Shown here piece by piece: positions 8,640 to 57,700 of a DNA stretch of 64,000 nt. The DNA lies in assembly GCF_963921235.1 (NCBI RefSeq), contig NC_086101.1, forward strand, positions 28,892,001 to 28,956,000. Reading direction: 5' to 3'. This DNA is from Mobula hypostoma. Lineage: Eukaryota. The notes below the pieces were generated by a model. That model saw only the letters and a program-made list of their open reading frames with translations, had not been told where the DNA came from and did no database searches. The position numbers were made by a program, and so were the translations under genes. Every line of letters starts with the position of its first letter. Position 1 is the stretch's first letter.

Positions 8640-9300
8640 TGAGCAGCTTCCCACGGGCTATTGGGAGGTTCCTGAAATTTACACTCGCCGAATTTGATGC
8701 AACACGACTGGAAGTGGTTTGGCTCCGCTCCCTCCCGCGATCTGCTGACACTCCACTCCCCCCGCAGTCCATTTCTGTCGAAGGATTTTCAGTTACTGGC
8801 TGCACCTGCACCGACTGGCCGCGTCTGTGAATCTAACTCCACCCTCAGCACTTCACTGACTAACGATCAGGGTTCAGTCGATGCGAGGAGTTGTCGCAAT
8901 GGAGAGCTGGACCGGACCGGTATCGCTCCTTGTCACCGCGTTATCTCTCTGCTCTGTCGCGGGAGGCCAGGCAGGTGAGGCGAGGGTATGTGACGGCGAT
9001 GGTCGGGGTTTGTGTCGGGAAATTCACCTTTAAATCTTTTGGACTTTCTGGCTGTCGCTCCATTAGACGGGAAGACGACCTCACCGCACTCCTGTGTTCT
9101 CATTTCACTCCTGTGAAATTTCTGGAGTCGATAAACTCGGGGCAAAATGATACTTGAATAGGTTTCACAGGTGGATAGGAATTGTCGCCAATTCCCAGAG
9201 GAAAGTCCCACAATCTTAACAGAGGCATCACATTAAAGCAATTAATCTGAGTTTAACTATCCTGTAACTGCCACGTTACGTCAGTCTGTTTCACAATACC
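8640..9300 (+). promoter_or_regulatory. CpG island / putative promoter around exon 1, with a perfect NF-kB site (GGAAAGTCCC, 9200-9209) and a CRE-like TTACGTCA (9276-9283)
   Basis: About 30 or more CpGs in 8641-9140 by manual count, against CpG-depleted old repeats nearby. GGAAAGTCCC is the reverse complement of the canonical kB site GGGACTTTCC. ATTGG at 8660. Confidence 0.55.
8899..8974 (+). CDS. Exon 1, signal peptide (25 aa) of the MHC class I-like gene
   Basis: ATG at 8899, hydrophobic core [12 protein letters not shown], small residues before cleavage (GGQA), strong donor CAG|GTGAGG at 8975. The phase-1 G joins AC of exon 2 to give D-SHSL, the typical class I mature N-terminus. Lies in a CpG-rich non-repeat island. 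Confidence 0.78.
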
Positions 9301-33300: not shown

Positions 33301-36300
33301 GGGGGCTGAGTACACAGCCTTGTGGGGCACCGGTGCTCAGAGTGATTGTAGAGGAGAGCTTGTCCCCTATTTTTACAGCCTGGGTCCTGTTTGTGAGGAA
33401 GTTGAAAATCCAGCTGCAGATCTGAGTGCTAAGGCCCAGGTTCCGGAGATTAGGAATCAGTTTATTTGGAATGATGGTATTAAAGGCAGAGCTGTAGTCA
33501 ATGAAAAGGTGCCTTACGTATGCATCTTTATTCTCCAGGTGTTCTAAGGAGGAATGTAGGGCCAGAGAGATGGCATCTGCCGTTGACCTGTTGCTTCGGT
33601 AGGCGAATTGCAAAGCGTCGAGGTTGACCGGTAGGCTGTGGTTGATGTGTGCCATAACCAATCTCTCGAAGCATTTCATAGCAATTGATGTCAGAGCCAC
33701 AGGTCAATAGTCATTCAGGCATGCCACCTTGCTCTTCTTCAGCACTGGGATTATCGTTGCCTTCTTAAAACACGAGGGGATCTTAGACTGAAGCAAGGAG
33801 CAGTTGAAGATGTCAGCAAACACTCCAGCTAGCTCGCTTGCACAGGCCCGGAGAACCCGTCCTGGGACACCATCTGGGCCCGTCGCCTTCCTTGGATTTA
33901 TCTTCAGGAAGGCACTTCTAACGTCCTCCTCGGTGACAATGAATCTCAATACCACCAGGTCCGGTTCATCCGGAGGGAGTGGGACGCTCCTCTTCTGTTC
34001 GAATCTTGTGTAGAATACGTTAAGTTCGTCAGGAAGAGAAGTACCACTGTTATTGATGTTCCCAGCCTTTTCTTTGCGCTCAGTGATCTCATTTAGACCC
34101 TGCCATAGTCTACCGGCACCCCTCTGGTTAGCCTTGGCTTCCAACTTGGCTCGATATTGCCTCTTGGCGCCCTTAATTGCTTTCCGGAGTTCACGCCTGG
34201 ATTCCGTGTAGTGACTGGTATCCCCGGACCTAAAAGCCGCAGCTCTAGCCTTTAAAAGGGATTTGACCTCATAATTCATCCGCAGGGAGAATGGGAACCA
34301 GGATGACAGAGCTGAGGATGAGCCTGCAGGTTTACAAGAAGATGATGGGTGTAACATGGATGTAAGGAAGGACAAGCCAATGATTGAGCACAATTGCAGA
34401 CAGAGCAATGAGTTAAATTGTACCACAGAGGCAAAATTCAAAACGGCGGAGAATGGAGAACTGAAGGTGCTGTATTTGGAATAAGGTGGATGAACTCATG
34501 GTGCAGTTAAAGATTGGTCTGTATGGCATTGTGGGGATCACAAAGCTGTGGCTGAAGAAAGTCCAAAGCCGGGAGCTTCACATCAAGGTTGTTGTAGATT
34601 GAATTGAATTGAATTGACTATTAGTTACATCCTTCATAATCTTTAAGTTACATCTCCATGTAAGTGTGCAATGTGTAATTTATAGTAATTTATAATAAAT
34701 ATTATGTACAACAGGATAGACAATATTATCATAGAAATTCAGTTGTGTCAGCATGAATTAAGCAGTCTGATGGCCGAGTGCAAGAAGCTGTCCCTCTTGG
34801 TCCTGGCTTTTATGTTATGGTACTGTTTCCCAAATGGTAGCAGCTGGAACATTTTGTGGTTGGGGTGACTCAGGTCCCTAATGATCCTTCGGGCCATTTT
34901 TACACACCTGTCTTTGTAAATGTCCTGAATAGTGGGAAGTTCACATCTACCGATATGCTTTAATAACCCAGATCTTATTAGGGAGCTGAACATAAAGGAT
35001 TCCTTAGGAGTCAGTGATCAAAATATGATTGAATTCATTCTGCAATTTGAGAGGGAGAAGCATAACTCACATGTATCAGTATCACAATGGAATAAAGGGA
35101 ATGACAGAGGCATGAGAGAGGAGCTTGCCCAGGTGGATTGAAGTGGGGATGACAGCAGAGCTGAAGTTTCTGGAATAGTTCACAAGGCGCAGGATAGATA
35201 TGCACCAAAGAGTAAGATGTTCTCAAATGGCAGAAGTAGGCAACTGTGGCTGACAAAGAAAGTTAAGGATTGCATAAATGTCAAGGAAACAGCATATAAG
35301 GTAACAAAAGTGAGTGGGAAGTTGGATGATTGGGAAGCTTTTAAAATCCAACAAAAAGTAACTGAAAAGACTATAAGAAGGGAAAAGATGAAATATGAGG
35401 GCTGACTAGCTAATAATATGAAGCAGGACACCAAAAGTTTTTTCAGTTATATAAAGAGTAAAAGGGAAGTGAGAGTTGATATTAGACTACTAGAATATGA
35501 TGCTGGTGAGGTAGTAATGCGGGACAAAGAATTGGCAAAGGACCCTAATGGGTACTTTGCATCTGTCTTCACTGTGGAAGACACTAGCAGTGTGCCAGAG
35601 GTCCGTGAGTGTCAGAGAGCAGGAGTGGGTGCTTTGCTGTTACAAAGGAAAAAGTGCTAACCAACTTCAAAGGTCTTAAAGTGGATAAGTCACCTGAGCC
35701 AGATGGACTATGTCTCAGAGTCTTGAGAGAGGTTGCTGAAGAGATAACAGATGCATTGGACATGCTCTTTGAAGAAAAGCCAGGAAATAATAATAAGACA
35801 CTAATCAAGCCACACTTAAAGCATTGTGAACAGTTTTGAGCCCCATATCTCAGAAAGGACGTGTTATCATCGGAGATAGTACAGAGGAGGTTCAGGAGGA
35901 TGATTCTGGGAATGAAGGGGTTAATGTATGAGGAGTGTTTGGCAACTTAGAACCTGTAACTATATAACCATATAACAATTATAGCACGGAAACAGGCTAT
36001 CTCGGCCCTTCTAGTCCGTGCCGAACTCCGACACTCACCTAGTCCCACCGACCTGCACTCGGTCCATAACCCTCCATTTCCTTCCTGTCCATATATCTAT
36101 CCAATTTAACTTTAAACATCAACATCGTACCTGCCTCAACCACTTCTGCTGGAAGCTCATTCCACACAGCTACCACTCTCTGAGTAAAGAAGTTCCCCCT
36201 CATGTTACCCCTAAACTTTTGCCCTTTAACTCTCAACTCATGTCCTCTTGTTTGAATCTCCCCCACTCTCAATGGAAAAACCCTATCCACATCAACTCTA

Positions 36301-42300: not shown

Positions 42301-45300
42301 CCAACAGACTCCAACAACTATCTTTACTTTTCATCCTCCCACTCTGCCTCTTGTGGGACTCCACTACCTCTTTTCTGTGCTCTTTCTCTGTCACCTTTGC
42401 TGCGATGATGAGAATTTCTACACTGGTGCCCCGGAAATGTCTTCTGCTTCTCCTTGAACCTTGGTTTCCTCTCTATCATGGTGGACTTATGTTCCAGTAT
42501 GTTTGCCTCTGACTTAGAAGCAACTCTATAGTGGGAGTTGGTGCTCCTGTTTCCCTGCTGCCCTTGACCTCCTTTGTGCTGGGGTTTGGGTTGTTTTGTT
42601 GGATTGGCTTCAGTGAGTATCTGCTTAGGATTTTGTAAATGGCCAGAGCAGTGAAGCAAGTTTTCATAGTGTTGGTTGCTCGTGTTTGGGGAGCTAATAA
42701 AGGGGGGTGGGAGTGCTGCCTGATCCAGTAGGATGTCTGTTTGGATGTGTATTAATCCATTCAAGTGGCGAGTATACCATCAAACTCCCGAGTTGTGCGT
42801 TATAAATTGTGAGCATCCTTTGTTGTGTTCTGACACTCCTCTCTCTCTGTCCTTTTACTCAGACTCACACAGCTTGATGTATTACTACTTCCAATCCATC
42901 AACATTCCTGAAATGCCAGCTTTCTTCAGGATTGGGATGCTCGATGACTTGCAGATAGACTACTACGACAGCACACTCCGTGAAGTAGAAGTCAAGCACC
43001 AGTTGATCGCAGATGGCTTATCGACCAACTACCGGAAAGAACAGAAAGAAATAACCGACCAGTTTTATAATTTCATCTTGACAAATCTGAAGCAATTTGC
43101 CTTATTCATTAGTGAGTGTCTTTGATCTCCACTACCCTTTGAGTATCACAGTGACTTGCATATTGCCAATACTTTGATGTTCTATTAGATCTGATTATGT
43201 TGTATCCAGTTTGAAGTCCTTCACTCTTTCAAATCTCTCAAATCTCCATTCTGCTCTCTACCTTTCTTAACTCCAATTACAAGAATTCTATCCTAATCAT
43301 CTGGGTAAGTTCTGACCCTTCAAAATAAACTGATTATCCAGTCCTCATTCCCCACGGACCTCTTCAGAGAAACAGTGAAAATCAAACCCACTGTCCATAC
43401 AGGGTTTGCCTGGCTCAAACCCTAATCCTAAGCCTACTCCCCAACTCCAGACTTGGGGATGCTTCAGTCCAGGATGGTTGGAACTAAGTCGTCTATGGTT
43501 CTTATCTAGTCACCTGCCACAATGACGCTTTCCAGATCGAATTCGGTGCGGGGACTCCGTGCATTAGAACATAGAATGCTACAACACAGGAACAGGCCCT
43601 TTGGCCCAAAATGTTCTGCTGAACTAATTATATTAATAATCAAATGTCAAACTAATCTCATCCTTTCTGCCTACACAATGTCCATGTCCTGCTCGCCTAA
43701 GCTTCTTGAACACCCTCTTTGTATCTGCTACTACCACAACCCCTGGAAGCACAACTTAGGAACATGCCATTCTGTAATAGTCTTACCCTGCACATCTCCA
43801 TTGAACATACCCCCTTTTCCATGCCCTCTTGTATTAGACATTTCAACTGAGGGAAAAATAATACCAGCTGTCAACTTTAAAACAGAGAAAACAGCCCAAA
43901 TTGGTCAAATCACTTGTTATAGCATATGCCATCCAATCCAGGCAGCATCTGGTAAGCATCTTCTGCACCTACTCCAAAGCCTCACCGTCACAGAGTGACC
44001 AGAACTGCTGTGTGGCACACTCTGTGCTTATTGACACTGAATACAAACATGTTGCTTTCACAATTCTCCGCTGTAACTCTCTGCAGTGGACATGGTTCAG
44101 CGCAGACTGTACAGTGCAGTCTCTCACTGTGAGCCCCTGCTCTGACCCACATGTTGACAGAGTCCTTCAATGTTCCCCCTGCTTTGTATGTACAGTACTA
44201 TGCACTGCACAGTGTTTCAACGTGATCTCTGTACTGTGCACTCTGCATAATTCAAGCTCGAGTTTATTTCTGATCGTAGGCTGACATACACAGGGTACAA
44301 ATGCCATAAAATCACTGTTTTACAGCAGCATCATGGTATATTACAGGACATGTTAGCATGGAGTCAATTTTAAATAAATATGCACAACCAGCACATGTGC
44401 AAAGTAGTAGTAGTCGTAGTTGTAGTAGTAGTAATCATACTTTATTGATCCTGGGGGAAATTGGTTAATTGGAAATTGGAAAAAGGTATACAACAAAATT
44501 AATTTAACAATATTTGTGCAAGATTAAGAGCCAAGAATATAATCTAGGGTCTCGTTAAGGCTTTTCTGGTTGGTTAAAGAACCTGGTGGTATTGGGCATG
44601 GAGCTCTTGTTGGAGCCTGAGGTGTTAGTCCTTTGGCCTCTGTCCCTCCTTCCTAGTGGTAGCATCAAGAAGAGAGTATGTCCTGGATGATAGGGAGGGT
44701 GTGGCTCCTGATGATGGATGTTGTCTTCCTGGGACATTGTCTTTCGCAGATGTCCTCAACGATGGGGAGAGCTGTGCCTGTGATGGGCCTGGTTGAGCCC
44801 AGCACCCCCAGAGCCTTTTGTCTTTCAGGGCTTTGGAGTTTACCTACCTCCAAAGCTGTGATGTAACCAATCCAAATGCTTTTCACTGCACGTTTGAAAA
44901 CATTGCCATTCGTTAATGACAAATTGAATCTCTTTAAACTTTCCCCTCCCACCTTGCCGTGTAGACAGTTGCTCACATTGATTACTGATTCCACCAGACC
45001 CCGGTGATCTGTGCCACACCCTGACAAATGTTCTATATAGGACACTTCACCCCATGCTCTCGGCCTTAACTGTACACAGTCGCTGACCGTGACCCACTAC
45101 TTGGTGCACCTCTTAGTCACGTAGCATTTACGTATTTAGCAGACCATTATCTAGTATTGGAAGCTTCAGCCATTAATGTTAATTAATCTGTTGATAATTT
45201 ACAGGCTTCAGCTACATACAGGCACTCTGGGGCTGCACACAATCTGGAGATACGGTCAACGCGATTCTAAAAATCAACTTCCTGGATATCGGAGAGGTCA

Positions 45301-48300
45301 GCTGTGATATCAACACAGGGAAATGCACTGGCACCGGTTTCCTAGCAATGTTCAATGATCAATTGAGCCAATTCAGTTTCACTGACATGACTGCATTGAA
45401 GAGTAACTGCACTTGGTATTTGCAAAGGGCTGTTCAGCTTGGAAGAGAAGCATTGGAAAGGCAAGGCAAGTGGAACATCCTGCGATGGTGAGGGAACTCC
45501 CAATTCAGCAACATAAAGGATACCTCAGTCTGAGACGATTATGGGGCTCTGAGACCGAGATGGTGTGGGCTGTTATGATTCAGGATACTGAAGGATTTGA
45601 TGATCTAACAAATTGATGGTGTTCCCAATCTGGGACAGAGAGGGATCTCCTGATCTGGACAGTAAGGAAGCTTCCAATCAGAGATGCAGAGGGATCTCCT
45701 CATACGGGAAAGAGAGGGAGCTCCCAAAACAAAATGGTTAGGGGGTTTCTCAATCTGCAGTAATGAGGGATCTCCTAATTTGAAACAGTGAGTTGGTTGG
45801 AGTGTATGGGCTGCAGGCCTGGAGGTGGACTGTAAGCCCACGATTGGCTCCATTGCTTCTCTCTGACTGAGGCGTTGAGCAAGTTTGAAGTGGATGAGGC
45901 CAAGTGCGGAGGCCAGGCTGGTGTTTGGCGCCATCTGCTGTGTTTGGCTGGTATTCCTCTCCCTTTTACTAGCTGCTGTTGGAGGAAAGTGCAGGAGGCT
46001 TGGGTTCCACATTGCAGGGATTGATCGGTGAGGCTCGTGGTTGTGACTCTTTTTGGGGGACTTTAGGGTTCATGTATTTCTGGATTCTGGTTACCCTTTG
46101 TTTCCTGTTTCTAAGTGGTTTGATCAGGGTGCATCAGTGCGCACTGGGCGCTTCAGCGAAGACTGAACCTGCGGCCTGCATTTGGCTAGTGGCAAAGCAC
46201 TGAACTAAACTGAGTACACCTAGACTTGATAAAACCGTAAGATATAGAAGCAGAATGGGGCCATTTGGCGCATCGAGTCTGCTCTGCCATTTCATCATGC
46301 TGGTCCATTATCCCTCACAGCTCCAATGTCCTGCCTTCTCCCCATATCGCTTCATGTCGTGACTATAAAGAATCTATCAATCTCTGCTTTAAATATACTA
46401 AAGATGTGGCCTCCACAGTTGCCAAGTTGCCTGTAACAACGAATTCCACAGATGTACTGCTCTCCGGCTAAAGAAATATTTCCTGATCTCCATTTTAAAA
46501 GGATGCCCCTCTACTCTGAGTGTCACAGAAATTTACTATTGCTGATTAAACAAGGGCACAGACCCCAGTATTCAGTTTAATTACTTACTTACATGACCAT
46601 GGAGAGCCCACTAAAAGACTCTGCTAAAGTGAGCACAAGCATGGTCTTTTATTCCTTAAAATACATGCAATTCAGCAGTTCTCAGGAGTCAAGAGTTCCT
46701 GCATAGACCTTATTGACAAGATTCAGGATGCTTCCATACCTTACACAAACTTAGATACACTACACTCAGCCCCCTTCTTCCAGATCGTTAATGTATATCG
46801 TAAACAGTTGCAGGCCCAGCACAGACCCCAGCGATACACCACTCACCACTGACTGCCAACCGGAGAAACACCCAGGCATCCCAACTCTCTTCTTGCTATT
46901 AGTCAACCAATCTTCTATCCATGCTAATACATTAGCCCCAACTCTATTGTTCTATTTTGGTAAATTATCACCAAAACCTCTACTATAACTTCTGCCATTT
47001 CTTTCAGTACCCTAGGACTTATCTATCTTCCAGTCCACACGATTGCTCAGCACTACCTCTTTAGTGATAGCTAACTCCATCCATTTATGCTATGCCACCA
47101 TCCCTTTTTTTAAAATTTTTTATTTTTATTTGGATAAGGAATTCACAAGTATCATGTACTTTTTTCACATGTATAACCTTTTCCATTTTTTTATATGTAT
47201 AAAACTATAATTATTTATACATTCCTAAGTACACATTAAGATGATATAAAAAGAAATTGGACACTTAAATAGATAATTATGTGCAGTTGAAATTCTAATC
47301 TATTAGGCTAAGTAATGGTATTAGTTGTTAAGAAAAATAGTAATAATAGTGGATTAATAATAGTTTCCATATATCTCTTCTGGACCACTTCTTCTGGTCC
47401 AAAATGTTGTATGTAAGTCTATGTAACAACCATTGTAGGTGTTTATATCCTAACTTGTTCATGCTTGCTCCTGCCCCCAAACATAATTATCCAATCCCTA
47501 TGTACTTACTTACTTAATTTTATCATTTTTTATCCCTTTCCCAAATCTTTTCCTTTACTTGTGTTAATTCTCTATTTTCCAAAAAAAAAACAAAAACAGT
47601 AAACATTTAGACTAGGGGTGCTTACGTTAGCAATATTACTGTGTTGATGAGAAGAGCAGTATAAATCATTAGGAGAGTCATCTAAAGTCTGCTTGCTTTG
47701 GGGTTATATATTCCAGATTTGATAAAATTTTTCTTTTTGAATTCTCAGGGAGTAAGTCATCTTTTCCATTTTAAATATTTCCAAGATAATTTCATGCCAA
47801 TCTTCTAATGTAAGTGGTATCGGATTTAGCCACTTTCTAGTGATTGATTTCTTACTTGCCGCTAAAAGGGCCTGCGGCAACTTTATATCTTTCTTCTGTT
47901 CAAGAAACAATACATACCCCAAATACTGCGTCTCAAAATTCAGAGGTATCTGGGTCCTAAGTACCTTAACTAATGTTCTGTGAATACCTTTCCAATATAA
48001 ACTTAAGTTAGGGCAATCCCAGAAAATATGGAAATGATTTGCCTCCTTGGAGCTGCACCTTCTCCAACACGTCACGTTTGTGTCTTTATATTTTTCCTGG
48101 TATGGCGTCTTGAAGTATCTTATAATATTTTTACAACAATGTTCTCTCCAAGTCAAAGAATTAGTCGAAGATCACTGAAAGCTGCATATTTTCCCCCAAG
48201 CCTCCTCTGAAAGTACCAACCCGCTTCTTTCTGCCACTTCTCTTTAATATACAATGTGTTTACATTTTTAGCATGGGAGAGTGCATTATATAATCGAGAA

Positions 48301-54300: not shown

Positions 54301-57300
54301 AGCTTGACGCACCTGGTGCAGATGTGTTTATCCGAGAGACTGGATGTCTCCCAGAATACTCACATCTCACACACAGTATGAGACACTGCCCCTGGAGTCA
54401 TTCTCACTACACTATGATGCCCTAACAGATAAGGAATGGACAATTAAGAACAAAAATACCCCTAATTGGATGTTTGATATCCTCTGTGTTGCTAGCTCAC
54501 TTTTTGCTGTTTGTGCAATCTGTTCTCTCTCTGCATGTTGGGTGTTTGATGTTTTCTTTGAACGGGTTCCTTGGTGCCTCTTTGTTCCTTTGCTGCATCA
54601 GAGGATAAACCTCAGAGTTGTATTCTGTATAAACACTTTGGTAATTAATCTACTTTGAATCTTTGAGTGAGGGCACTCCCAAAGGAGACATTGACTGATC
54701 TCCCGGTCTGGGGCAGTGAGGGACCTTCTGATCAATACTGCTGTGCTGAGGGCATTCTCCATCTTGCAGTTTGAGGATGATCTGAATTTGGGATATTGCA
54801 CGACAGCTGGACTGGGAACAGTGCCTGTGACCTTGATCTGGACCTATCCGATGAATGAACATAATCTCTGTCTGTAGTCTGCATGAGCTTGAGCTGGGGA
54901 GGCTGATTTCAGATTAGATGGTGAGTGTAATAGTGAGGCAGATCAGGTTCTGAGGCCGTGAAGGATGTGAGAGTAATCCCAACATTGAACACTGTAACTT
55001 CAGTCTGTAACGGTAAGGTAACATCAGCCTGTGTTGAGGTGGTGACATAATTTTTGATTCTTCCCCAGTTGCTCCAAAGACTCAGGTGTTGACAAGGAGG
55101 CCGACAGCTACTGAAGGCGAGAGTCTGTCGTGCATCATCACTCCCTTCTACCCCCGTGCTATCAATGCCACTTGGCTGAAGAATGGGCAGGTTGTCTCTG
55201 AGGGCTACAACGTGACTGTGCTACCAAACTACAATGATACATACTGGATGGAACTAGTCATTGAGCTGCAGGGCAACGACCCGAACATCTATACTTGTCA
55301 TGTCGTGCACAGCAGCCTGCCAAAGGCCCTGATGGTGAAGGGAGGTAGGTCATTGTATGGTACAGAATTTGCTTCATTCTGCCTGTGGTGGCTCATGGAC
55401 TCATGCAGCAGAGAAGGAGGCTCTTCAGCCTATCTGATTCATGCAAACCCGATTCATGCAAACCCTCTAGTTCTCAAAAACGCTTGGCCCGTCCCCTTCT
55501 TTAACTTGATGATTCAACTGCTCATCTAGATACGTCTTGAAAATTATGAAGGTCTCTGCCTCCACCATCTCCTCAGGCAGTCCATTCCCAAATCCAACAC
55601 CCCCTTGATGAAAGTATTCTTCTGTAAATTCCCTATAAACCTCTTAGTCATTATCTTAAACCTACCTCGAGTTATAGGCACCTTTACTACGGGGAAGGGT
55701 TTACTACTGTTCAAGTAAACACATGAAGTGGAAGCATAAACTGCAGCAAGTTAAACCTGTAGCATTCTTCAGAATCAGAATCAGGTTTATTGTTGCTGGC
55801 ATCTGTTGTGAAATTTGTTAACTTAGCAGCAGCAGAACAATGCAATGCATGATAATGTAGAAAAAATATAAAACAAGTAAATCAACTACAGTAATTATAT
55901 ATATGTATATTGAGCAGATCTTAAAATAGTGCAAAAACAGAAATAATATATATTTTAAAAAATTCTTCCAACATTTTCTATGTATTTCCTATCTACACCC
56001 CTAATAATTCTGTATAACTCCATCAAGTCCACCCTCAGTCTCCTCCCATCTAAGGAAAACAAAACCAGCATATCTATTCTCTCTTCCCATTCCATCTGAG
56101 CCACATTCCGGTGAATCTCCTCCGCACTCTGTCCAATGCAATCACATCTCTCCTCTGCTCTGGTGACCAGAACTGTAAACAATACTCAGAATGTAGCCTC
56201 ACCGGTGTTTTATAAAGCTGTACCATAATTCCCATGCCCTTGTATTCTATGCACTGATAACTGGTATCTCATACACTTCCTTCACCACCCTATTTACCTC
56301 TTTAAAAGACCTAATCAAGCATCTCCACCATAAAGCTGCACCATAAGTTCCCTTCTCTTGAATTCTATGCCCTGATCAGTGAAATCCAGCATCCTGTAGG
56401 CTATCTTCACAACCTTGTCCTCGACTTTGAACGACTTGCTCAAGTAGCCCCACTCCTTCTCTGAAAATTTCTTAATTCCAAGAACGTATCCCATTTCAAT
56501 TTTGGAAGTTATTATTTACTGTGCTCTTTTATCACTCAAATTAAATCTGTTCCTTCTGCTCACCAGATGTTACAGAAGCAGTTGAGCTGTTGGTCAAAGA
56601 AATATAATAAGAACTCAACAGAAATAACAACTAAGAAGCAATTGGGACTGTGGGCAGACCTGACTGTCAAGTCGTCACTGCCTGGCTGTTGGGTGTTTGA
56701 TTGTCATAGATTCATAGAATTCTGCAGCAGAGAAACAGACCCTTCAGTCCAACACGCCTTTGTCAATCAAGATTTCCATTCAAAGAAGTCCCATTTATCC
56801 TGGCCCATATCTCCCTAAACCCTTTAGATTCATGTACTGGTGGATGTATCTTGTAAAAGATGTTAACTTGTCTGCCTCAACCACTTCTTCTGGCACCCAT
56901 AAATTGACCATCATGTTGCCACTCAGGTTCCTGTTACATCTTTTCTCTCTTAACTTAAACCTATACCATCAGGAGCCCTGAAAAATTATTGTGCACTCTC
57001 TCTATGCCCCTCAAAATTTTATATACTTCTCTCTATAGCTCAGCCCCCTACACTCCAGGGAAAATAATCCCAGCCTATCTTGTCTCTCATTATTTCTCAA
57101 GCATTCCATTCCTGGCACCATCCTTGTGAATCTCCTCTGCATCCTTTCCATCCTAATGACATCCTTCCTTCCTCAAAGCACCTTCCATTCTCCTATCCTC
57201 CAATGTATAAGATACTACCCACCCAGGACTACCCTCCCCCACACACACCCCCGCCCCCGCTTCTCCCAGCTCCCATCAGGCACAGATACAAAAGCCTGAC

Positions 57301-57700
57301 AGAATGTACTACTATGATCAATGAACACTTCTGTCTTTCTCCTGTGAGAAAATTGAGTGGACCCAAACATAGTAAGATAGGCATCTGACCTCACAATCTA
57401 ACTTTTAATGGTCTTGCATCCTATTGCCAGCTAGCACCACATATCCTCTGTAAAAGTAATACATTACTCTGCATTCTGTTATTGTTTTCCCTTGTACAAC
57501 CTTAATATCCTGATGTAATGATCTGTATGGACAGAATGCAAACCATGTATTTCCACTGTACCTGGTAACTGGTGACAATAATAAAATAATTTATACATTT
57601 ACCGATCTTTACTTGGTGGACAGGAGTTGGTGAGCCCCATGCTGCAGGTCCTATGTTGGGGCTGATGACTGTGTTTGCGATCATCTTTGGAGTGATGTAG
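8899..57700 (+). CDS. Divergent non-classical MHC class I-like heavy chain, 5 coding exons: 8899-8974, 42863-43111, 45205-45465, 55069-55344, 57624-57700 (939 nt, 312 aa plus stop)
   Basis: Manual exon assembly. All four introns are phase 1 and the joined frame is open: leader [25 protein letters not shown] / alpha1 [23 protein letters not shown] / alpha2 [31 protein letters not shown] / alpha3 [29 protein letters not shown] / TM-like tail. The leader-to-alpha1 link across about 34 kb is the least certain junction. Confidence 0.88.
10648..11254 (+). repeat. 5' LTR of the Gypsy element
   Basis: Direct repeat of 23204-23613 plus 26352-26591. Termini cgtaggg...gttaca. Confidence 0.9.
11258..11267 (+). 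other. Primer binding site, tRNA-Pro type (TGGGGGCTCG)
   Basis: 3 nt after the 5' LTR. Identical to the first 10 nt of the MLV tRNA-Pro PBS TGGGGGCTCGTCCGGGAT. Confidence 0.8.
11326..12686 (+). pseudogene. Gypsy gag with PNMA-like N-terminal and capsid domains and a CCHC zinc knuckle, frameshifted
   Basis: [21 protein letters not shown]; [34 protein letters not shown]; [14 protein letters not shown]. Confidence 0.85.
12805..13440 (-). mobile_element. CR1 3' fragment nested in the Gypsy gag-pol junction
   Basis: (catagaa)n tail at 12804-12817; ORF 12866-13438 with [11 protein letters not shown]. Confidence 0.9.
13473..16284 (+). mobile_element. CR1 LINE (EN-RT-3' tail) nested inside a minus-strand CR1
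   Basis: ORFs 13441-13752, 13895-14389, 14608-15159, 15269-15496 and 15503-16210. Tail tttctatggtttctatgg at about 16268-16284. Confidence 0.9.
16285..18360 (-). mobile_element. CR1 LINE EN-RT portion
   Basis: ORFs 18038-18493, 17117-18034, 16571-17089 and 16134-16694. Confidence 0.9.
18361..22628 (+). pseudogene. Gypsy pol (protease, dUTPase-like insert, RT, RNase H, integrase), many frameshifts and stops
   Basis: AILDT(R)SQVTLLY at about 18420-18465; [24 protein letters not shown](T)[40 protein letters not shown]. Confidence 0.9.
19568..19996 (-). mobile_element. Short CR1 3' fragment inserted in the Gypsy RT
   Basis: (caataga)n tail. The Gypsy frame PDQYTV|PRAEDAL rejoins across it, with ggtc duplicated. 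Confidence 0.85.
23190..23203 (+). other. Polypurine tract
   Basis: ggtgggggggagaa immediately before the 3' LTR. Confidence 0.75.
23204..26591 (+). repeat. 3' LTR of the Gypsy element, split by a CR1 insertion (LTR parts about 23204-23613 and 26352-26591)
   Basis: Collinear with the 5' LTR on both sides of the CR1. Ends ggccgttata followed by the TSD CACA. Confidence 0.88.
23614..26345 (-). mobile_element. CR1 LINE (EN-RT-3' tail) inserted in the Gypsy 3' LTR
   Basis: 559-aa ORF 24644-26323, plus 24171-24719 and 23808-24164; (catagaa)n tail. Confidence 0.93.
26843..32126 (+). mobile_element. Full-length L1-clade LINE (ORF1 from 26997, ORF2 from 28387), degenerate; 16-bp TSD ggaatagaatgaggag
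   Basis: TSD at 26827-26842 and 32127-32142. Coiled-coil ORF1 with [15 protein letters not shown]; APE endonuclease ISFNVNG..LQE..SDH; RT; A-rich 3' end. Confidence 0.92.
30462..31171. mobile_element. Probable solo LTR (710 bp) inserted in the L1 RT
   Basis: Termini cgtaac...cttaca, flanked by catg/cgtg (consistent with a CpG-decayed cgcg TSD). L1 frame KLACY|ADDILIYL rejoins across it. Confidence 0.7.
32325..34288 (-). mobile_element. Rex1/Babar-type LINE, 5'-truncated
   Basis: ORFs 33704-34441 and 32453-33700: [50 protein letters not shown]. Confidence 0.88.
34560..34955 (-). mobile_element. Rex/Babar 3' fragment
   Basis: [31 protein letters not shown]; (caatt)n tail. Confidence 0.75.
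35960..39400 (-). mobile_element. CR1 LINE with ORF1 esterase, EN, RT and 3' tail; internal deletions
   Basis: ORFs 39071-39436 ([11 protein letters not shown]), 38521-38976, 38176-38442, 37715-38110, 36890-37693, 36401-36850 and 36039-36500. Confidence 0.9.
40780..41410 (+). mobile_element. Rex/Babar 3' fragment
   Basis: [26 protein letters not shown]; (aattc)n tail at about 41385-41410. Confidence 0.75.
41480..42110 (-). mobile_element. CR1 3' fragment
   Basis: (cataagac)n tail and homology to the other CR1 3' ends in the window. Confidence 0.7.
42863..43111 (+). CDS. Exon 2, MHC class I alpha1 domain (83 aa)
   Basis: Polypyrimidine acceptor ctctctctgtccttttactcag and donor A|GTGAGT. Translation [83 protein letters not shown] contains the class I SHSL-Y and G-x-x-DD-x-Q-x-x-Y-YDS motifs. 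Confidence 0.93.
45205..45465 (+). CDS. Exon 3, MHC class I alpha2 domain (87 aa)
   Basis: Not in the ORF track. Acceptor ttgataatttacag. Translation [87 protein letters not shown] has Q-x-x-x-GC and C-x-x-x-L-x-x-x-x-x-x-G-x-x-x-L-E-R, the canonical C101-C164 equivalents. Donor AAG|GCAAGT (GC-AG intron). Confidence 0.9.
45480..45790. repeat. Degenerate minisatellite with a period of about 25 bp (about 12 units, core GAGGGATCTCC)
   Basis: The core recurs at about 45490, 45640, 45689, 45714, 45740 and 45765, with more diverged units between. Confidence 0.6.
47108..52918 (-). mobile_element. Full-length L1-clade LINE, antisense in intron 3; 11-bp TSD accatcccttt
   Basis: TSD at 47097-47107 and 52919-52929. 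ORF1 52790-51814 (frameshift). ORF2 pieces 51451-50477 (EN), 50597-49536, 49451-48153 (FANDV at the YADD position) and 48156-47704. T-rich tail at 47108. Confidence 0.93.
52930..54400 (-). mobile_element. Decayed CR1 (ORF1 esterase and EN) that hosts the L1; continues at about 46775-47096
   Basis: [12 protein letters not shown] (53778-54008) and [14 protein letters not shown] (53129-53416). Confidence 0.75.
55069..55344 (+). CDS. Exon 4, alpha3 Ig C1-set domain (92 aa)
   Basis: Acceptor ttttgattcttccccag and donor GAG|GTAGGT. Translation [92 protein letters not shown] has C1-set motifs C..FYP..W..LPN..YTC-x-V-x-H-x-SL. Confidence 0.95.

What the first reader, a model, noticed from the sequence alone, without database searches (positions are those of the whole stretch)
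42863..45465. Groove lacks most peptide-anchoring residues and looks hydrophobic (CD1-like lipid-binder candidate)
By-eye alignment to HLA-A2: Y7 and Y59 are kept, but Y/R84, T143, K146, W147, Y159 and Y171 appear replaced (alpha2 helices read FLAMFNDQL and [16 protein letters not shown]). The floor strands ([30 protein letters not shown]) and the alpha1 helix ([20 protein letters not shown]) are rich in F/I/L/M. Some segments resemble CD1 ([16 protein letters not shown]). This points to non-peptide, possibly lipid, ligands.
Basis: inference. Interest (0 to 1): 0.75.

Follow-up and report, generated by a model that had tools for sequence, protein, structure and literature searches.

The report
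Devil-ray UFA gene, oily groove

Summary
The two stretches are the alpha1 and alpha2 exons of an intact five-exon MHC class I-like gene. Its spliced product is exactly RefSeq XP_062903553.1 of Mobula hypostoma (318 aa).

**Anchor residues.** In an alignment where 20 classical class I sequences all show the anchors Y7, Y59, R84, T143, K146, W147, Y159 and Y171, this protein keeps only Y7 and Y59. The other six read F, F, Q, L, A and A.

**Groove chemistry.** At 35 standard pocket positions it is 61% hydrophobic, against 42 ± 6% in classical molecules.

**Family.** It is not a new lineage. Its best solved relative, in sequence and in fold, is PDB 8GM8, "shark nonclassical MHC class I, UFA". In a tree it sits inside the UFA clade (100/100 support), in a devil-ray-specific cluster of duplicates.

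**Ligand.** Published notes call UFA CD1-like and lipid-binding, from unpublished data and a personal communication.

**CD1.** It works like CD1 but does not test as a CD1 family member. It has no CD1-type Pfam match, no special fold closeness to CD1 and no cytoplasmic tail.

**Expression.** A 95%-identical copy is transcribed and spliced at the same alpha1-alpha2 joint. Expression of this exact copy is only hinted at.

This scan had already flagged and identified several other UFA copies in this genome.

Verdict: new member of a known kind.

The parts
8881..8974 (+). Exon 1: start codon and signal peptide ([31 protein letters not shown]), phase-1 GTGAGG donor. It lies about 34 kb upstream of alpha1, across an intron full of transposable elements.
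   Evidence: tblastn of family members; sequence; the spliced product equals P0055
42863..43111 (+). Exon 2: alpha1 domain (four floor strands plus one long, very hydrophobic helix [20 protein letters not shown]). Keeps Y7 and Y59.
   Evidence: RNA-type contigs start and end exactly at these edges
45205..45465 (+). Exon 3: alpha2 domain, 87 residues. Has the class I disulfide pair (C125/C183 in the precursor) and an extra cysteine pair (C148/C155, SCDINTGKC). T143, K146, W147, Y159 and Y171 are replaced. GC-AG intron donor (GCAAGT).
   Evidence: the splice joint 43111->45205 is seen in contigs
55069..55344 (+). Exon 4: alpha3 immunoglobulin C1-set domain with three N-glycosylation sequons (NAT, NVT, NDT).
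   Evidence: Pfam C1-set E 3.6e-14; 8GM8 alpha3 E 7.8e-25
57624..57700 (+). Exon 5: short stalk and tail-less hydrophobic C-terminus ([25 protein letters not shown], then TAG). This is a GPI-signal-like ending with no cytoplasmic tail.
   Evidence: the same type of ending is present in the full-length ray and shark family members shown

Best explanation
The finding covers the alpha1 and alpha2 exons of an intact, RefSeq-annotated nonclassical MHC class I gene of the devil ray Mobula hypostoma. The gene belongs to the elasmobranch UFA lineage.

The protein has a signal peptide, an alpha1-alpha2 platform, a C1-set alpha3 domain and a tail-less, GPI-signal-like end. It folds as a class I molecule. 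Its groove has lost the hydrogen-bonding residues that clamp peptide ends and is lined mainly by F, L, I, A and W.

The most likely function (inferred) is to sit on the cell surface holding hydrophobic, non-peptide cargo, most probably lipid acyl chains as reported for nurse-shark UFA, and to display it to lymphocyte receptors. That makes it a functional analogue of CD1. With no cytoplasmic tail it has no tyrosine sorting motif, so loading would be in the secretory pathway or at the surface rather than by tail-directed endosomal recycling.

Shown here: gene structure, intactness, family membership, loss of anchors, hydrophobic pocket positions and the class I fold.

Inferred: lipid binding by this copy, beta2-microglobulin pairing, the GPI anchor and recognition by T cells.
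For: - **Gene model.** Five exons with AG acceptors and GT/GC donors. Their translation is identical to P0055 = XP_062903553.1.
- **Solved relatives.** The best solved relative for every domain and for the whole protein is 8GM8 (E 1.2e-59). UGA 9CH4 is next (1.3e-26), then MR1 and classical class I chains.
- **Fold.** The AF2 model has pLDDT 89.3. The Foldseek top hit is 8GM8, 'Crystal structure of shark nonclassical MHC CLASS I, UFA' (E 3.9e-26, TM 0.83), six orders of magnitude ahead of the next hit. For the alpha1-alpha2 platform alone, 8GM8 gives Z 20.4 and rmsd 2.4 A over 165 residues, UGA gives 19.1, and a plateau of other class I molecules lies at 17-18.
- **Tree.** The UFA clade has 100/100 support and is separate from classical class I. 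The window gene lies in a Mobula-only sub-clade.
- **Groove.** Anchors read YYFFQLAA against YYRTKWYY. Pocket positions are 61% hydrophobic against 42 +/- 6%. The crystallised nurse-shark UFA (P0063) scores 63% on the same positions.
- **Constraint.** Only one departure (W79L) from columns that are at least 90% conserved in the family, so there is no sign of decay.
- **Transcription.** Contigs in two runs join 43111 to 45205 exactly.
- **Literature.** PMC10751288 describes UFA as CD1-like in its binding region and located in the MHC-Ib cluster. PMC12562908 reports that crystal structure and mass spectrometry suggest CD1d-type lipids.
Against: - Lipid binding is documented only second-hand (unpublished data and a personal communication), and for shark UFA, which is only 39% identical over the ectodomain and 32-33% in alpha1 and alpha2.
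- This copy has many more bulky aromatics in the platform (13 Phe against 6 in nurse-shark UFA; Phe at 7 of the 35 pocket positions). They could fill the groove rather than line it.
- No coordinates were available, so groove volume and openness were not measured.
- The spliced contigs seen carry the alpha2 variants of the 95%-identical copy P0040, not of this copy. For this copy there is only a hint: one putative RNA run holds 0.52 of its alpha2 words.
- Two tryptophans usual in class I (W51 and W60 by the ruler) are L and R here.
Confidence: 0.62

Rival explanations
1. A ligand-free surface marker. The groove is filled by its own bulky hydrophobic side chains, and the molecule acts as a GPI-anchored ligand for an innate receptor, as ULBP/RAET1, MIC or HFE-type molecules do, not as a carrier of lipid.
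For: Phe at 7 of the 35 pocket positions, plus W and Y residues. Tail-less GPI-type end. ULBP6 and ULBP3 platforms score Z 17.4-17.8, as high as peptide-binding class I molecules.
Against: The closest structure by a clear margin is UFA, which is reported to hold lipid (PMC12562908). Pocket hydrophobicity equals that of the crystallised UFA (0.61 against 0.63). A filled groove would not need hydrophobic character to be conserved across 28 family members (0.57 +/- 0.05).
Confidence: 0.15
2. A presenter of hydrophobic peptides or lipopeptides, as chicken YF1*7.1 presents N-myristoylated peptides, rather than of pure lipids.
For: Y7 and Y59, which belong to the pocket for the peptide N-terminus, are kept. 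YF1*7.1 structures rank 4-8 for the platform, at Z about 18.
Against: Y159 and Y171 (the other half of the N-terminal clamp) and the whole C-terminal clamp (84, 143, 146, 147) are lost. YF1*7.1 does not stand above the general class I plateau.
Confidence: 0.13
3. A recently duplicated, functionally redundant or silent copy on its way to becoming a pseudogene. The working gene would be the 95%-identical copy P0040 or the conserved P0036/P0002-type orthologue.
For: The gene is stretched to 49 kb by transposable-element insertions, including a 34-kb first intron. The laid spliced contigs carry P0040-type alpha2 variants. Earlier scan notes report truncated or decaying UFA copies nearby. W51 and W60 are lost.
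Against: The 318-codon reading frame is open and all splice sites are intact. There is only one departure from family-conserved residues. One putative RNA run holds about half of this copy's own alpha2 words. RefSeq models the gene as coding.
Confidence: 0.1

Closest known systems
Elasmobranch UFA (nurse shark Ginglymostoma cirratum UFA, PDB 8GM8, released 2024-11-27)
   Same: Best match in sequence for all three domains (E 1.2e-59) and in fold (Foldseek E 3.9e-26; platform Z 20.4). Same shortened end of alpha1, same extra cysteine pair in alpha2, same loss of six peptide anchors and same pocket hydrophobicity (0.61 against 0.63). The crystallised 8GM8 chain stops after alpha3, but the other full-length shark UFA sequences end in the same tail-less way. 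They share one clade with 100/100 support.
   Different: Only 39% identical over the ectodomain. This copy belongs to a ray-specific, multi-copy sub-lineage, whereas each shark species yielded one sequence in these searches. It is more aromatic (13 against 6 Phe in alpha1-alpha2), W51 and W60 are replaced, and an N-glycan sequon (NCT) sits next to the C164-equivalent cysteine.
Elasmobranch UGA (PDB 9CH4, released 2026-03-18)
   Same: Second-best solved relative (E 1.3e-26; platform Z 19.1). Also a shark nonclassical class I molecule reported as CD1-like and lipid-binding.
   Different: Clearly more distant than UFA in sequence. Its alpha2 aligns with several gaps and lacks the SCD...C cysteine pair in the aligned segment.
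CD1 (mammalian CD1a-e, chicken CD1-1/CD1-2)
   Same: Works alike as far as can be inferred: a class I-like heavy chain with a hydrophobic groove that lacks the peptide clamps. RefSeq's automatic names for some paralogues are 'CD1d-like' and 'CD1c-like'.
   Different: No hit to Pfam PF16497 (MHC_I_3), the model that matches CD1-type platform domains. Chicken CD1-1 is rank 35 at Z 17.3 and no mammalian CD1 is in the top 50 for the platform. There is no cytoplasmic tail, so no YXXZ endosomal sorting motif. Orthology with CD1 is not shown.
Classical MHC class I (e.g. nurse shark UAA, PDB 6LUP; HLA-A2)
   Same: Same exon-per-domain layout with phase-1 introns, same fold, same conserved disulfides, and Y7 and Y59.
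   Different: 22-24% identity. Six of eight peptide-terminus anchors are replaced, about 6 residues are missing at the alpha1/alpha2 junction just after position 84, alpha2 is shorter, and there is no transmembrane-plus-tail region.

Membership tests
Elasmobranch UFA lineage | Groups with the named UFA protein (8GM8) to the exclusion of classical UAA and of UGA | tested here: met
   phmmer E 1.2e-59 against 1.3e-26 (UGA) and 1e-18 or weaker for stand-alone classical class I heavy chains. ML tree: UFA clade 100/100. No UGA sequence was in the tree.
Elasmobranch UFA lineage | Class I architecture: leader, alpha1, alpha2 and C1-set alpha3, each on its own phase-1 exon | tested here: met
   Exon model and exact match to P0055; Pfam C1-set; AF2 class I fold
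Elasmobranch UFA lineage | Family-specific platform features: short end of alpha1, extra Cys pair in alpha2, loss of anchors 84/143/146/147/159/171 | tested here: met
   Alignments; cysteines at 148/155
Elasmobranch UFA lineage | Platform fold closest to the UFA crystal structure | tested here: met
   Z 20.4, rmsd 2.4 A over 165 residues, top of 999 chains
Elasmobranch UFA lineage | Location in the MHC class Ib cluster (with UDA/UEA) | not tested
   The window holds only this gene and transposable elements; no flanking marker genes were examined.
Elasmobranch UFA lineage | Binds lipid | not testable with these tools
   Only literature statements exist, and for shark UFA (PMC12562908, PMC10751288)
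CD1 | Sequence membership (Pfam MHC_I_3, PF16497) | tested here: not met
   No PF16497 hit for P0055 at E <= 1. P0063 and P0002 score 21.6 and 25.1 bits, under the cut-off of 35.
CD1 | Platform fold closer to CD1 than to other class I molecules | tested here: not met
   Chicken CD1-1 rank 35, Z 17.3; no mammalian CD1 or EPCR in the top 50
CD1 | Hydrophobic groove without peptide clamps | tested here: met
   61% hydrophobic pocket positions; 2 of 8 anchors kept. Groove depth and volume were not measured.
CD1 | Cytoplasmic tail with tyrosine sorting motif (CD1b, c, d) | tested here: not met
   The protein ends ...AIIFGVM* directly after the hydrophobic segment
Classical MHC class Ia | Eight conserved peptide-terminus anchors (Y7, Y59, Y/R84, T143, K146, W147, Y159, Y171) | tested here: not met
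   YYFFQLAA against YYRTKWYY in 20 of 20 classical sequences

The most novel reading that the evidence does not exclude
Stingrays and devil rays may have multiplied UFA into a set of isoforms with different groove chemistry, much as mammals did with CD1a-e. These searches found one UFA sequence per shark species. On this reading, the window copy, with an unusually aromatic alpha1 helix, lost W51/W60 and differences from its 95%-identical twin at floor positions 116 and 123, would carry a different class of hydrophobic ligand or pair differently with beta2-microglobulin.
Probability: 0.2. Interest if true: 0.55.

Novelty: new member of a known kind. Interest (0 to 1): 0.3.

Why it matters
UFA and UGA are the evidence that lipid-type antigen presentation may be as old as the jawed vertebrates. 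This gene adds nothing categorically new to that. It does show that the hydrophobic, clamp-less groove is conserved from sharks to devil rays: 28 sequences, 0.57 +/- 0.05 hydrophobic at pocket positions. It also shows that myliobatiform rays hold five or six UFA copies rather than the 'single or low copy' number stated in a review. That makes rays a natural system for asking whether CD1-like isoform diversification arose independently. For the scan, it confirms that a tool-less reading of groove residues predicted the right functional class.

Tried and rejected
1. **Leader exon.** A leader close to alpha1 (34770-34836 or 42405-42480) was rejected. tblastn with family members places the true leader at 8881-8974, and the RefSeq product confirms it.
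2. **Numbering ruler.** Nurse-shark UAA (P0102) as the ruler gave wrong positions because of indels relative to the mammalian numbering. It was replaced by a mammalian sequence whose landmarks check out.
3. **Groove variability among paralogues.** Pocket positions are not significantly more variable than other positions (permutation p 0.35 for 6 Mobula copies, 0.17 for 12 ray copies, 0.09 for sharks). Diversifying selection on the groove is therefore not claimed.
4. **Relaxed constraint.** Rejected: only one departure from family-conserved columns.
5. **Primary UFA paper.** Not found in the library ('8GM8', UFA/UGA/CD1/shark terms). Only two secondary mentions exist.
6. **ESM Atlas look-up of alpha2.** It gave only generic MHC class I/II fragment clusters, all under 0.9.
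7. **Locus of the near-twin P0040.** Its DNA could not be fetched because the file is too large, so allele versus paralogue remains open.
8. **Pocket volume.** Not computed, because the tools give no model coordinates.
Full report
**What is there.** The finding's two blocks are exons.
- 42862-43107 (+) reads [10 protein letters not shown]...NLKQFALF.
- 45207-45464 (+) reads [10 protein letters not shown]...GREALERQ.
- A C1-set immunoglobulin exon follows at 55069-55344.
- A last exon at 57624-57700 ends in a hydrophobic stretch directly followed by TAG.
- tblastn with family members places the signal-peptide exon at 8881-8974, about 34 kb upstream across an intron packed with LINE and retroelement reading frames.

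Every internal exon has an AG acceptor. The donors are GT, except the alpha2 donor, which is GCAAGT. All four introns are phase 1. The spliced 318-codon product is identical, residue for residue, to P0055 = XP_062903553.1, 'major histocompatibility complex class I-related gene protein-like isoform X1' of Mobula hypostoma. The gene is therefore real, intact and already annotated.

**Family.** Each domain on its own, and the whole protein, finds PDB 8GM8 chain A as its best solved relative.
- By domain: alpha1 E 3.8e-12, alpha2 1.4e-8, alpha3 7.8e-25. Whole protein: 1.2e-59.
- 9CH4 is second (1.3e-26). MR1 and classical class I chains follow.
- Foldseek titles these entries 'Crystal structure of shark nonclassical MHC CLASS I, UFA' (released 2024-11-27) and '...UGA' (2026-03-18).
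- The 265-residue nurse-shark protein P0063 ('MHC class I protein', Ginglymostoma cirratum) has the length of the 8GM8 chain, and its sequence agrees with the 8GM8 residues printed in the alignments.

An AlphaFold2 model of the ectodomain (67-sequence alignment, mean pLDDT 89.3, pTM 0.77) has the class I fold. Its top hit is 8GM8 at E 3.9e-26 and TM 0.83, against 3e-20 for the next hit. The alpha1-alpha2 platform folded alone (pLDDT 88.9) matches 8GM8 at Z 20.4 with rmsd 2.4 A over 165 residues. UGA scores 19.1, and about fifty other class I, MR1, YF1*7.1 and ULBP chains lie on a plateau at 17-18.

A maximum-likelihood tree separates a UFA clade of 28 sequences (100/100 support) from classical class I (100/100).
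- These searches found one sequence per shark species, and the shark branching roughly follows the species.
- Batoids form their own clade (100/98).
- Within stingrays and devil rays there is a conserved pair (P0036/P0002) plus genus-specific bursts of duplicates.
- The window gene sits in the Mobula burst, next to P0040 (95.4% identical; on a 516-kb unplaced scaffold of the same species).

**The groove.** I numbered positions with a mammalian class I sequence (P0185) that carries Y7, Y59, Y84, C101, K146, Y159, C164 and Y171 at the expected numbers. I aligned it with 28 UFA and 20 classical sequences.
- As a check of the alignment, all 20 classical sequences, from chimaera to bird, read Y-Y-R-T-K-W-Y-Y at 7/59/84/143/146/147/159/171.
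- The window protein reads Y-Y-F-F-Q-L-A-A. Nurse-shark UFA reads Y-Y-I-L-M-I-L-V.
- HMMER's alignment to MR1 shifts residues 143-147 by one or two places. It still restores none of the lost anchors and agrees on Y159 to A and Y171 to A.

At the 35 positions that form pockets A-F in HLA-A2 (textbook knowledge, after Saper and Matsumura), the figures are:

| Protein set | Hydrophobic fraction | Mean Kyte-Doolittle | Charged residues |
|---|---|---|---|
| Window protein | 0.61 | +0.86 | 3 |
| UFA family (28) | 0.57 +/- 0.05 | +1.0 +/- 0.3 | 3.6 |
| Classical (20) | 0.42 +/- 0.06 | -0.14 +/- 0.32 | 5.4 |

Positions near 84 and 143-156 lie next to indels, so those single assignments are approximate.

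**What is known about UFA.**
- Verissimo et al. [quoted passage not shown] They say it maps in the class Ib cluster with UDA and UEA, and that orthology with CD1 is hard to assess.
- I found no primary paper in the library.

**Works like CD1, but is not shown to be CD1.**
- Pfam's MHC_I_3 model (PF16497), which matches CD1-type platforms, does not hit this protein. It hits P0063 and P0002 only below threshold.
- Chicken CD1-1 is rank 35 for the platform, and no mammalian CD1 or EPCR is in the top 50.
- The protein has no cytoplasmic tail, so it lacks the tyrosine motif that sends CD1b, CD1c and CD1d through endosomes.

**Mechanism (inferred).** The signal peptide takes the chain into the ER. 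Pairing with beta2-microglobulin is likely, because the alpha3 domain is a typical C1-set domain, 52% identical to that of 8GM8. The tail-less end suggests exchange for a GPI anchor. The groove would hold acyl chains, with Y7, Y59 and a few polar residues near the groove mouth. A lymphocyte receptor would read the surface. None of these steps was tested here.

**Is this copy working?**
- In favour: the reading frame and splice sites are intact. Only one residue departs from columns that are at least 90% conserved in the family, W79L, which is W51 by the ruler.
- Transcription: contigs of two runs (762 and 1135 letters) cover alpha1 and jump exactly from 43111 to 45205 (GT..AG, skipping 2093). 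They start their match exactly at 42863, with 261 and 109 more letters upstream, so they are spliced transcripts.
- However, their ten alpha2 differences include every P0040-specific change: 45237 A>G is T126A, 45273-4 is I138A, 45283 is L141Q, 45288 is I143F, 45295 is E145V, 45377 is S172R and 45387 is M176V. They therefore derive from the P0040 copy or allele.
- For the window copy itself there is only a hint: one putative RNA run holds 0.52 of its alpha2 words.

**Extra analysis that gave nothing.** Among ray paralogues, pocket positions are not significantly more variable than the rest (p 0.17-0.35).

**Verdict.** The gene is a new, already annotated member of the known UFA lineage. This scan had already identified several other UFA copies in the same genome. 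I used those notes as leads and reached the identification independently through the PDB, fold and tree results.

Noticed in passing
window 45205-45465 compared with P0040: The window copy and its 95%-identical twin P0040 have an almost identical alpha1 (one change, I114V). They differ at 7 residues of alpha2, including floor positions 116 (I to A) and 123 (E to V) by the ruler. Of the 9 alpha2 nucleotide differences listed, 8 underlie these amino-acid changes. Whether the two are alleles or paralogues is open.
   Followed up: partly
window 45466-45471: The alpha2 exon uses a GC-AG intron (donor GCAAGT), a rare but standard splice type. The reading frame and the RefSeq product need this donor.
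   Followed up: yes
window 8975-42862: Intron 1 is about 34 kb long and filled with LINE reverse-transcriptase reading frames and a Gypsy/retrovirus-like element with integrase and gag-like frames. The whole gene spans 49 kb, against 16.7 kb for the P0040 gene.
   Followed up: partly
P0053, P0054 (RefSeq isoforms X3 and X2 of this gene): Two annotated isoforms start at MDSHSL... or MYYYF... and lack the signal peptide. They would not enter the ER, and probably reflect alternative or spurious 5' exons inside the transposon-rich intron.
   Followed up: no
window 45405-45413 (precursor N182, NCT): An N-glycosylation sequon sits on the alpha2 helix directly before the C164-equivalent cysteine (ruler position 163), on the face a receptor would see. 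Other family members carry N-S-T or N-T-S two residues earlier. Nurse-shark UFA has N-P-R, which is not a sequon.
   Followed up: partly
window 43003-43005 and 43030-43032 (precursor L79, R89): Two tryptophans that are near-universal in class I (W51 and W60 by the ruler) are Leu and Arg in this copy and in P0040, but are kept in the other Mobula paralogues.
   Followed up: partly
P0002, P0036-P0052 (ray proteins): Devil rays and stingrays carry five or six UFA-type genes each, in genus-specific clusters. These searches found one per shark species, and a review calls UFA 'single- or low-copy'. RefSeq's automatic names for these paralogues are inconsistent: MR1-like, CD1d-like, CD1c-like, HFE homolog, zinc-alpha-2-glycoprotein-like and even class II DQ beta-like.
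   Followed up: partly
window 44435-44469: A 32-35-letter stretch inside the alpha1-alpha2 intron is held at very high depth by contigs of all four runs laid, with unrelated flanks. It is presumably part of a widespread repeat.
   Followed up: no
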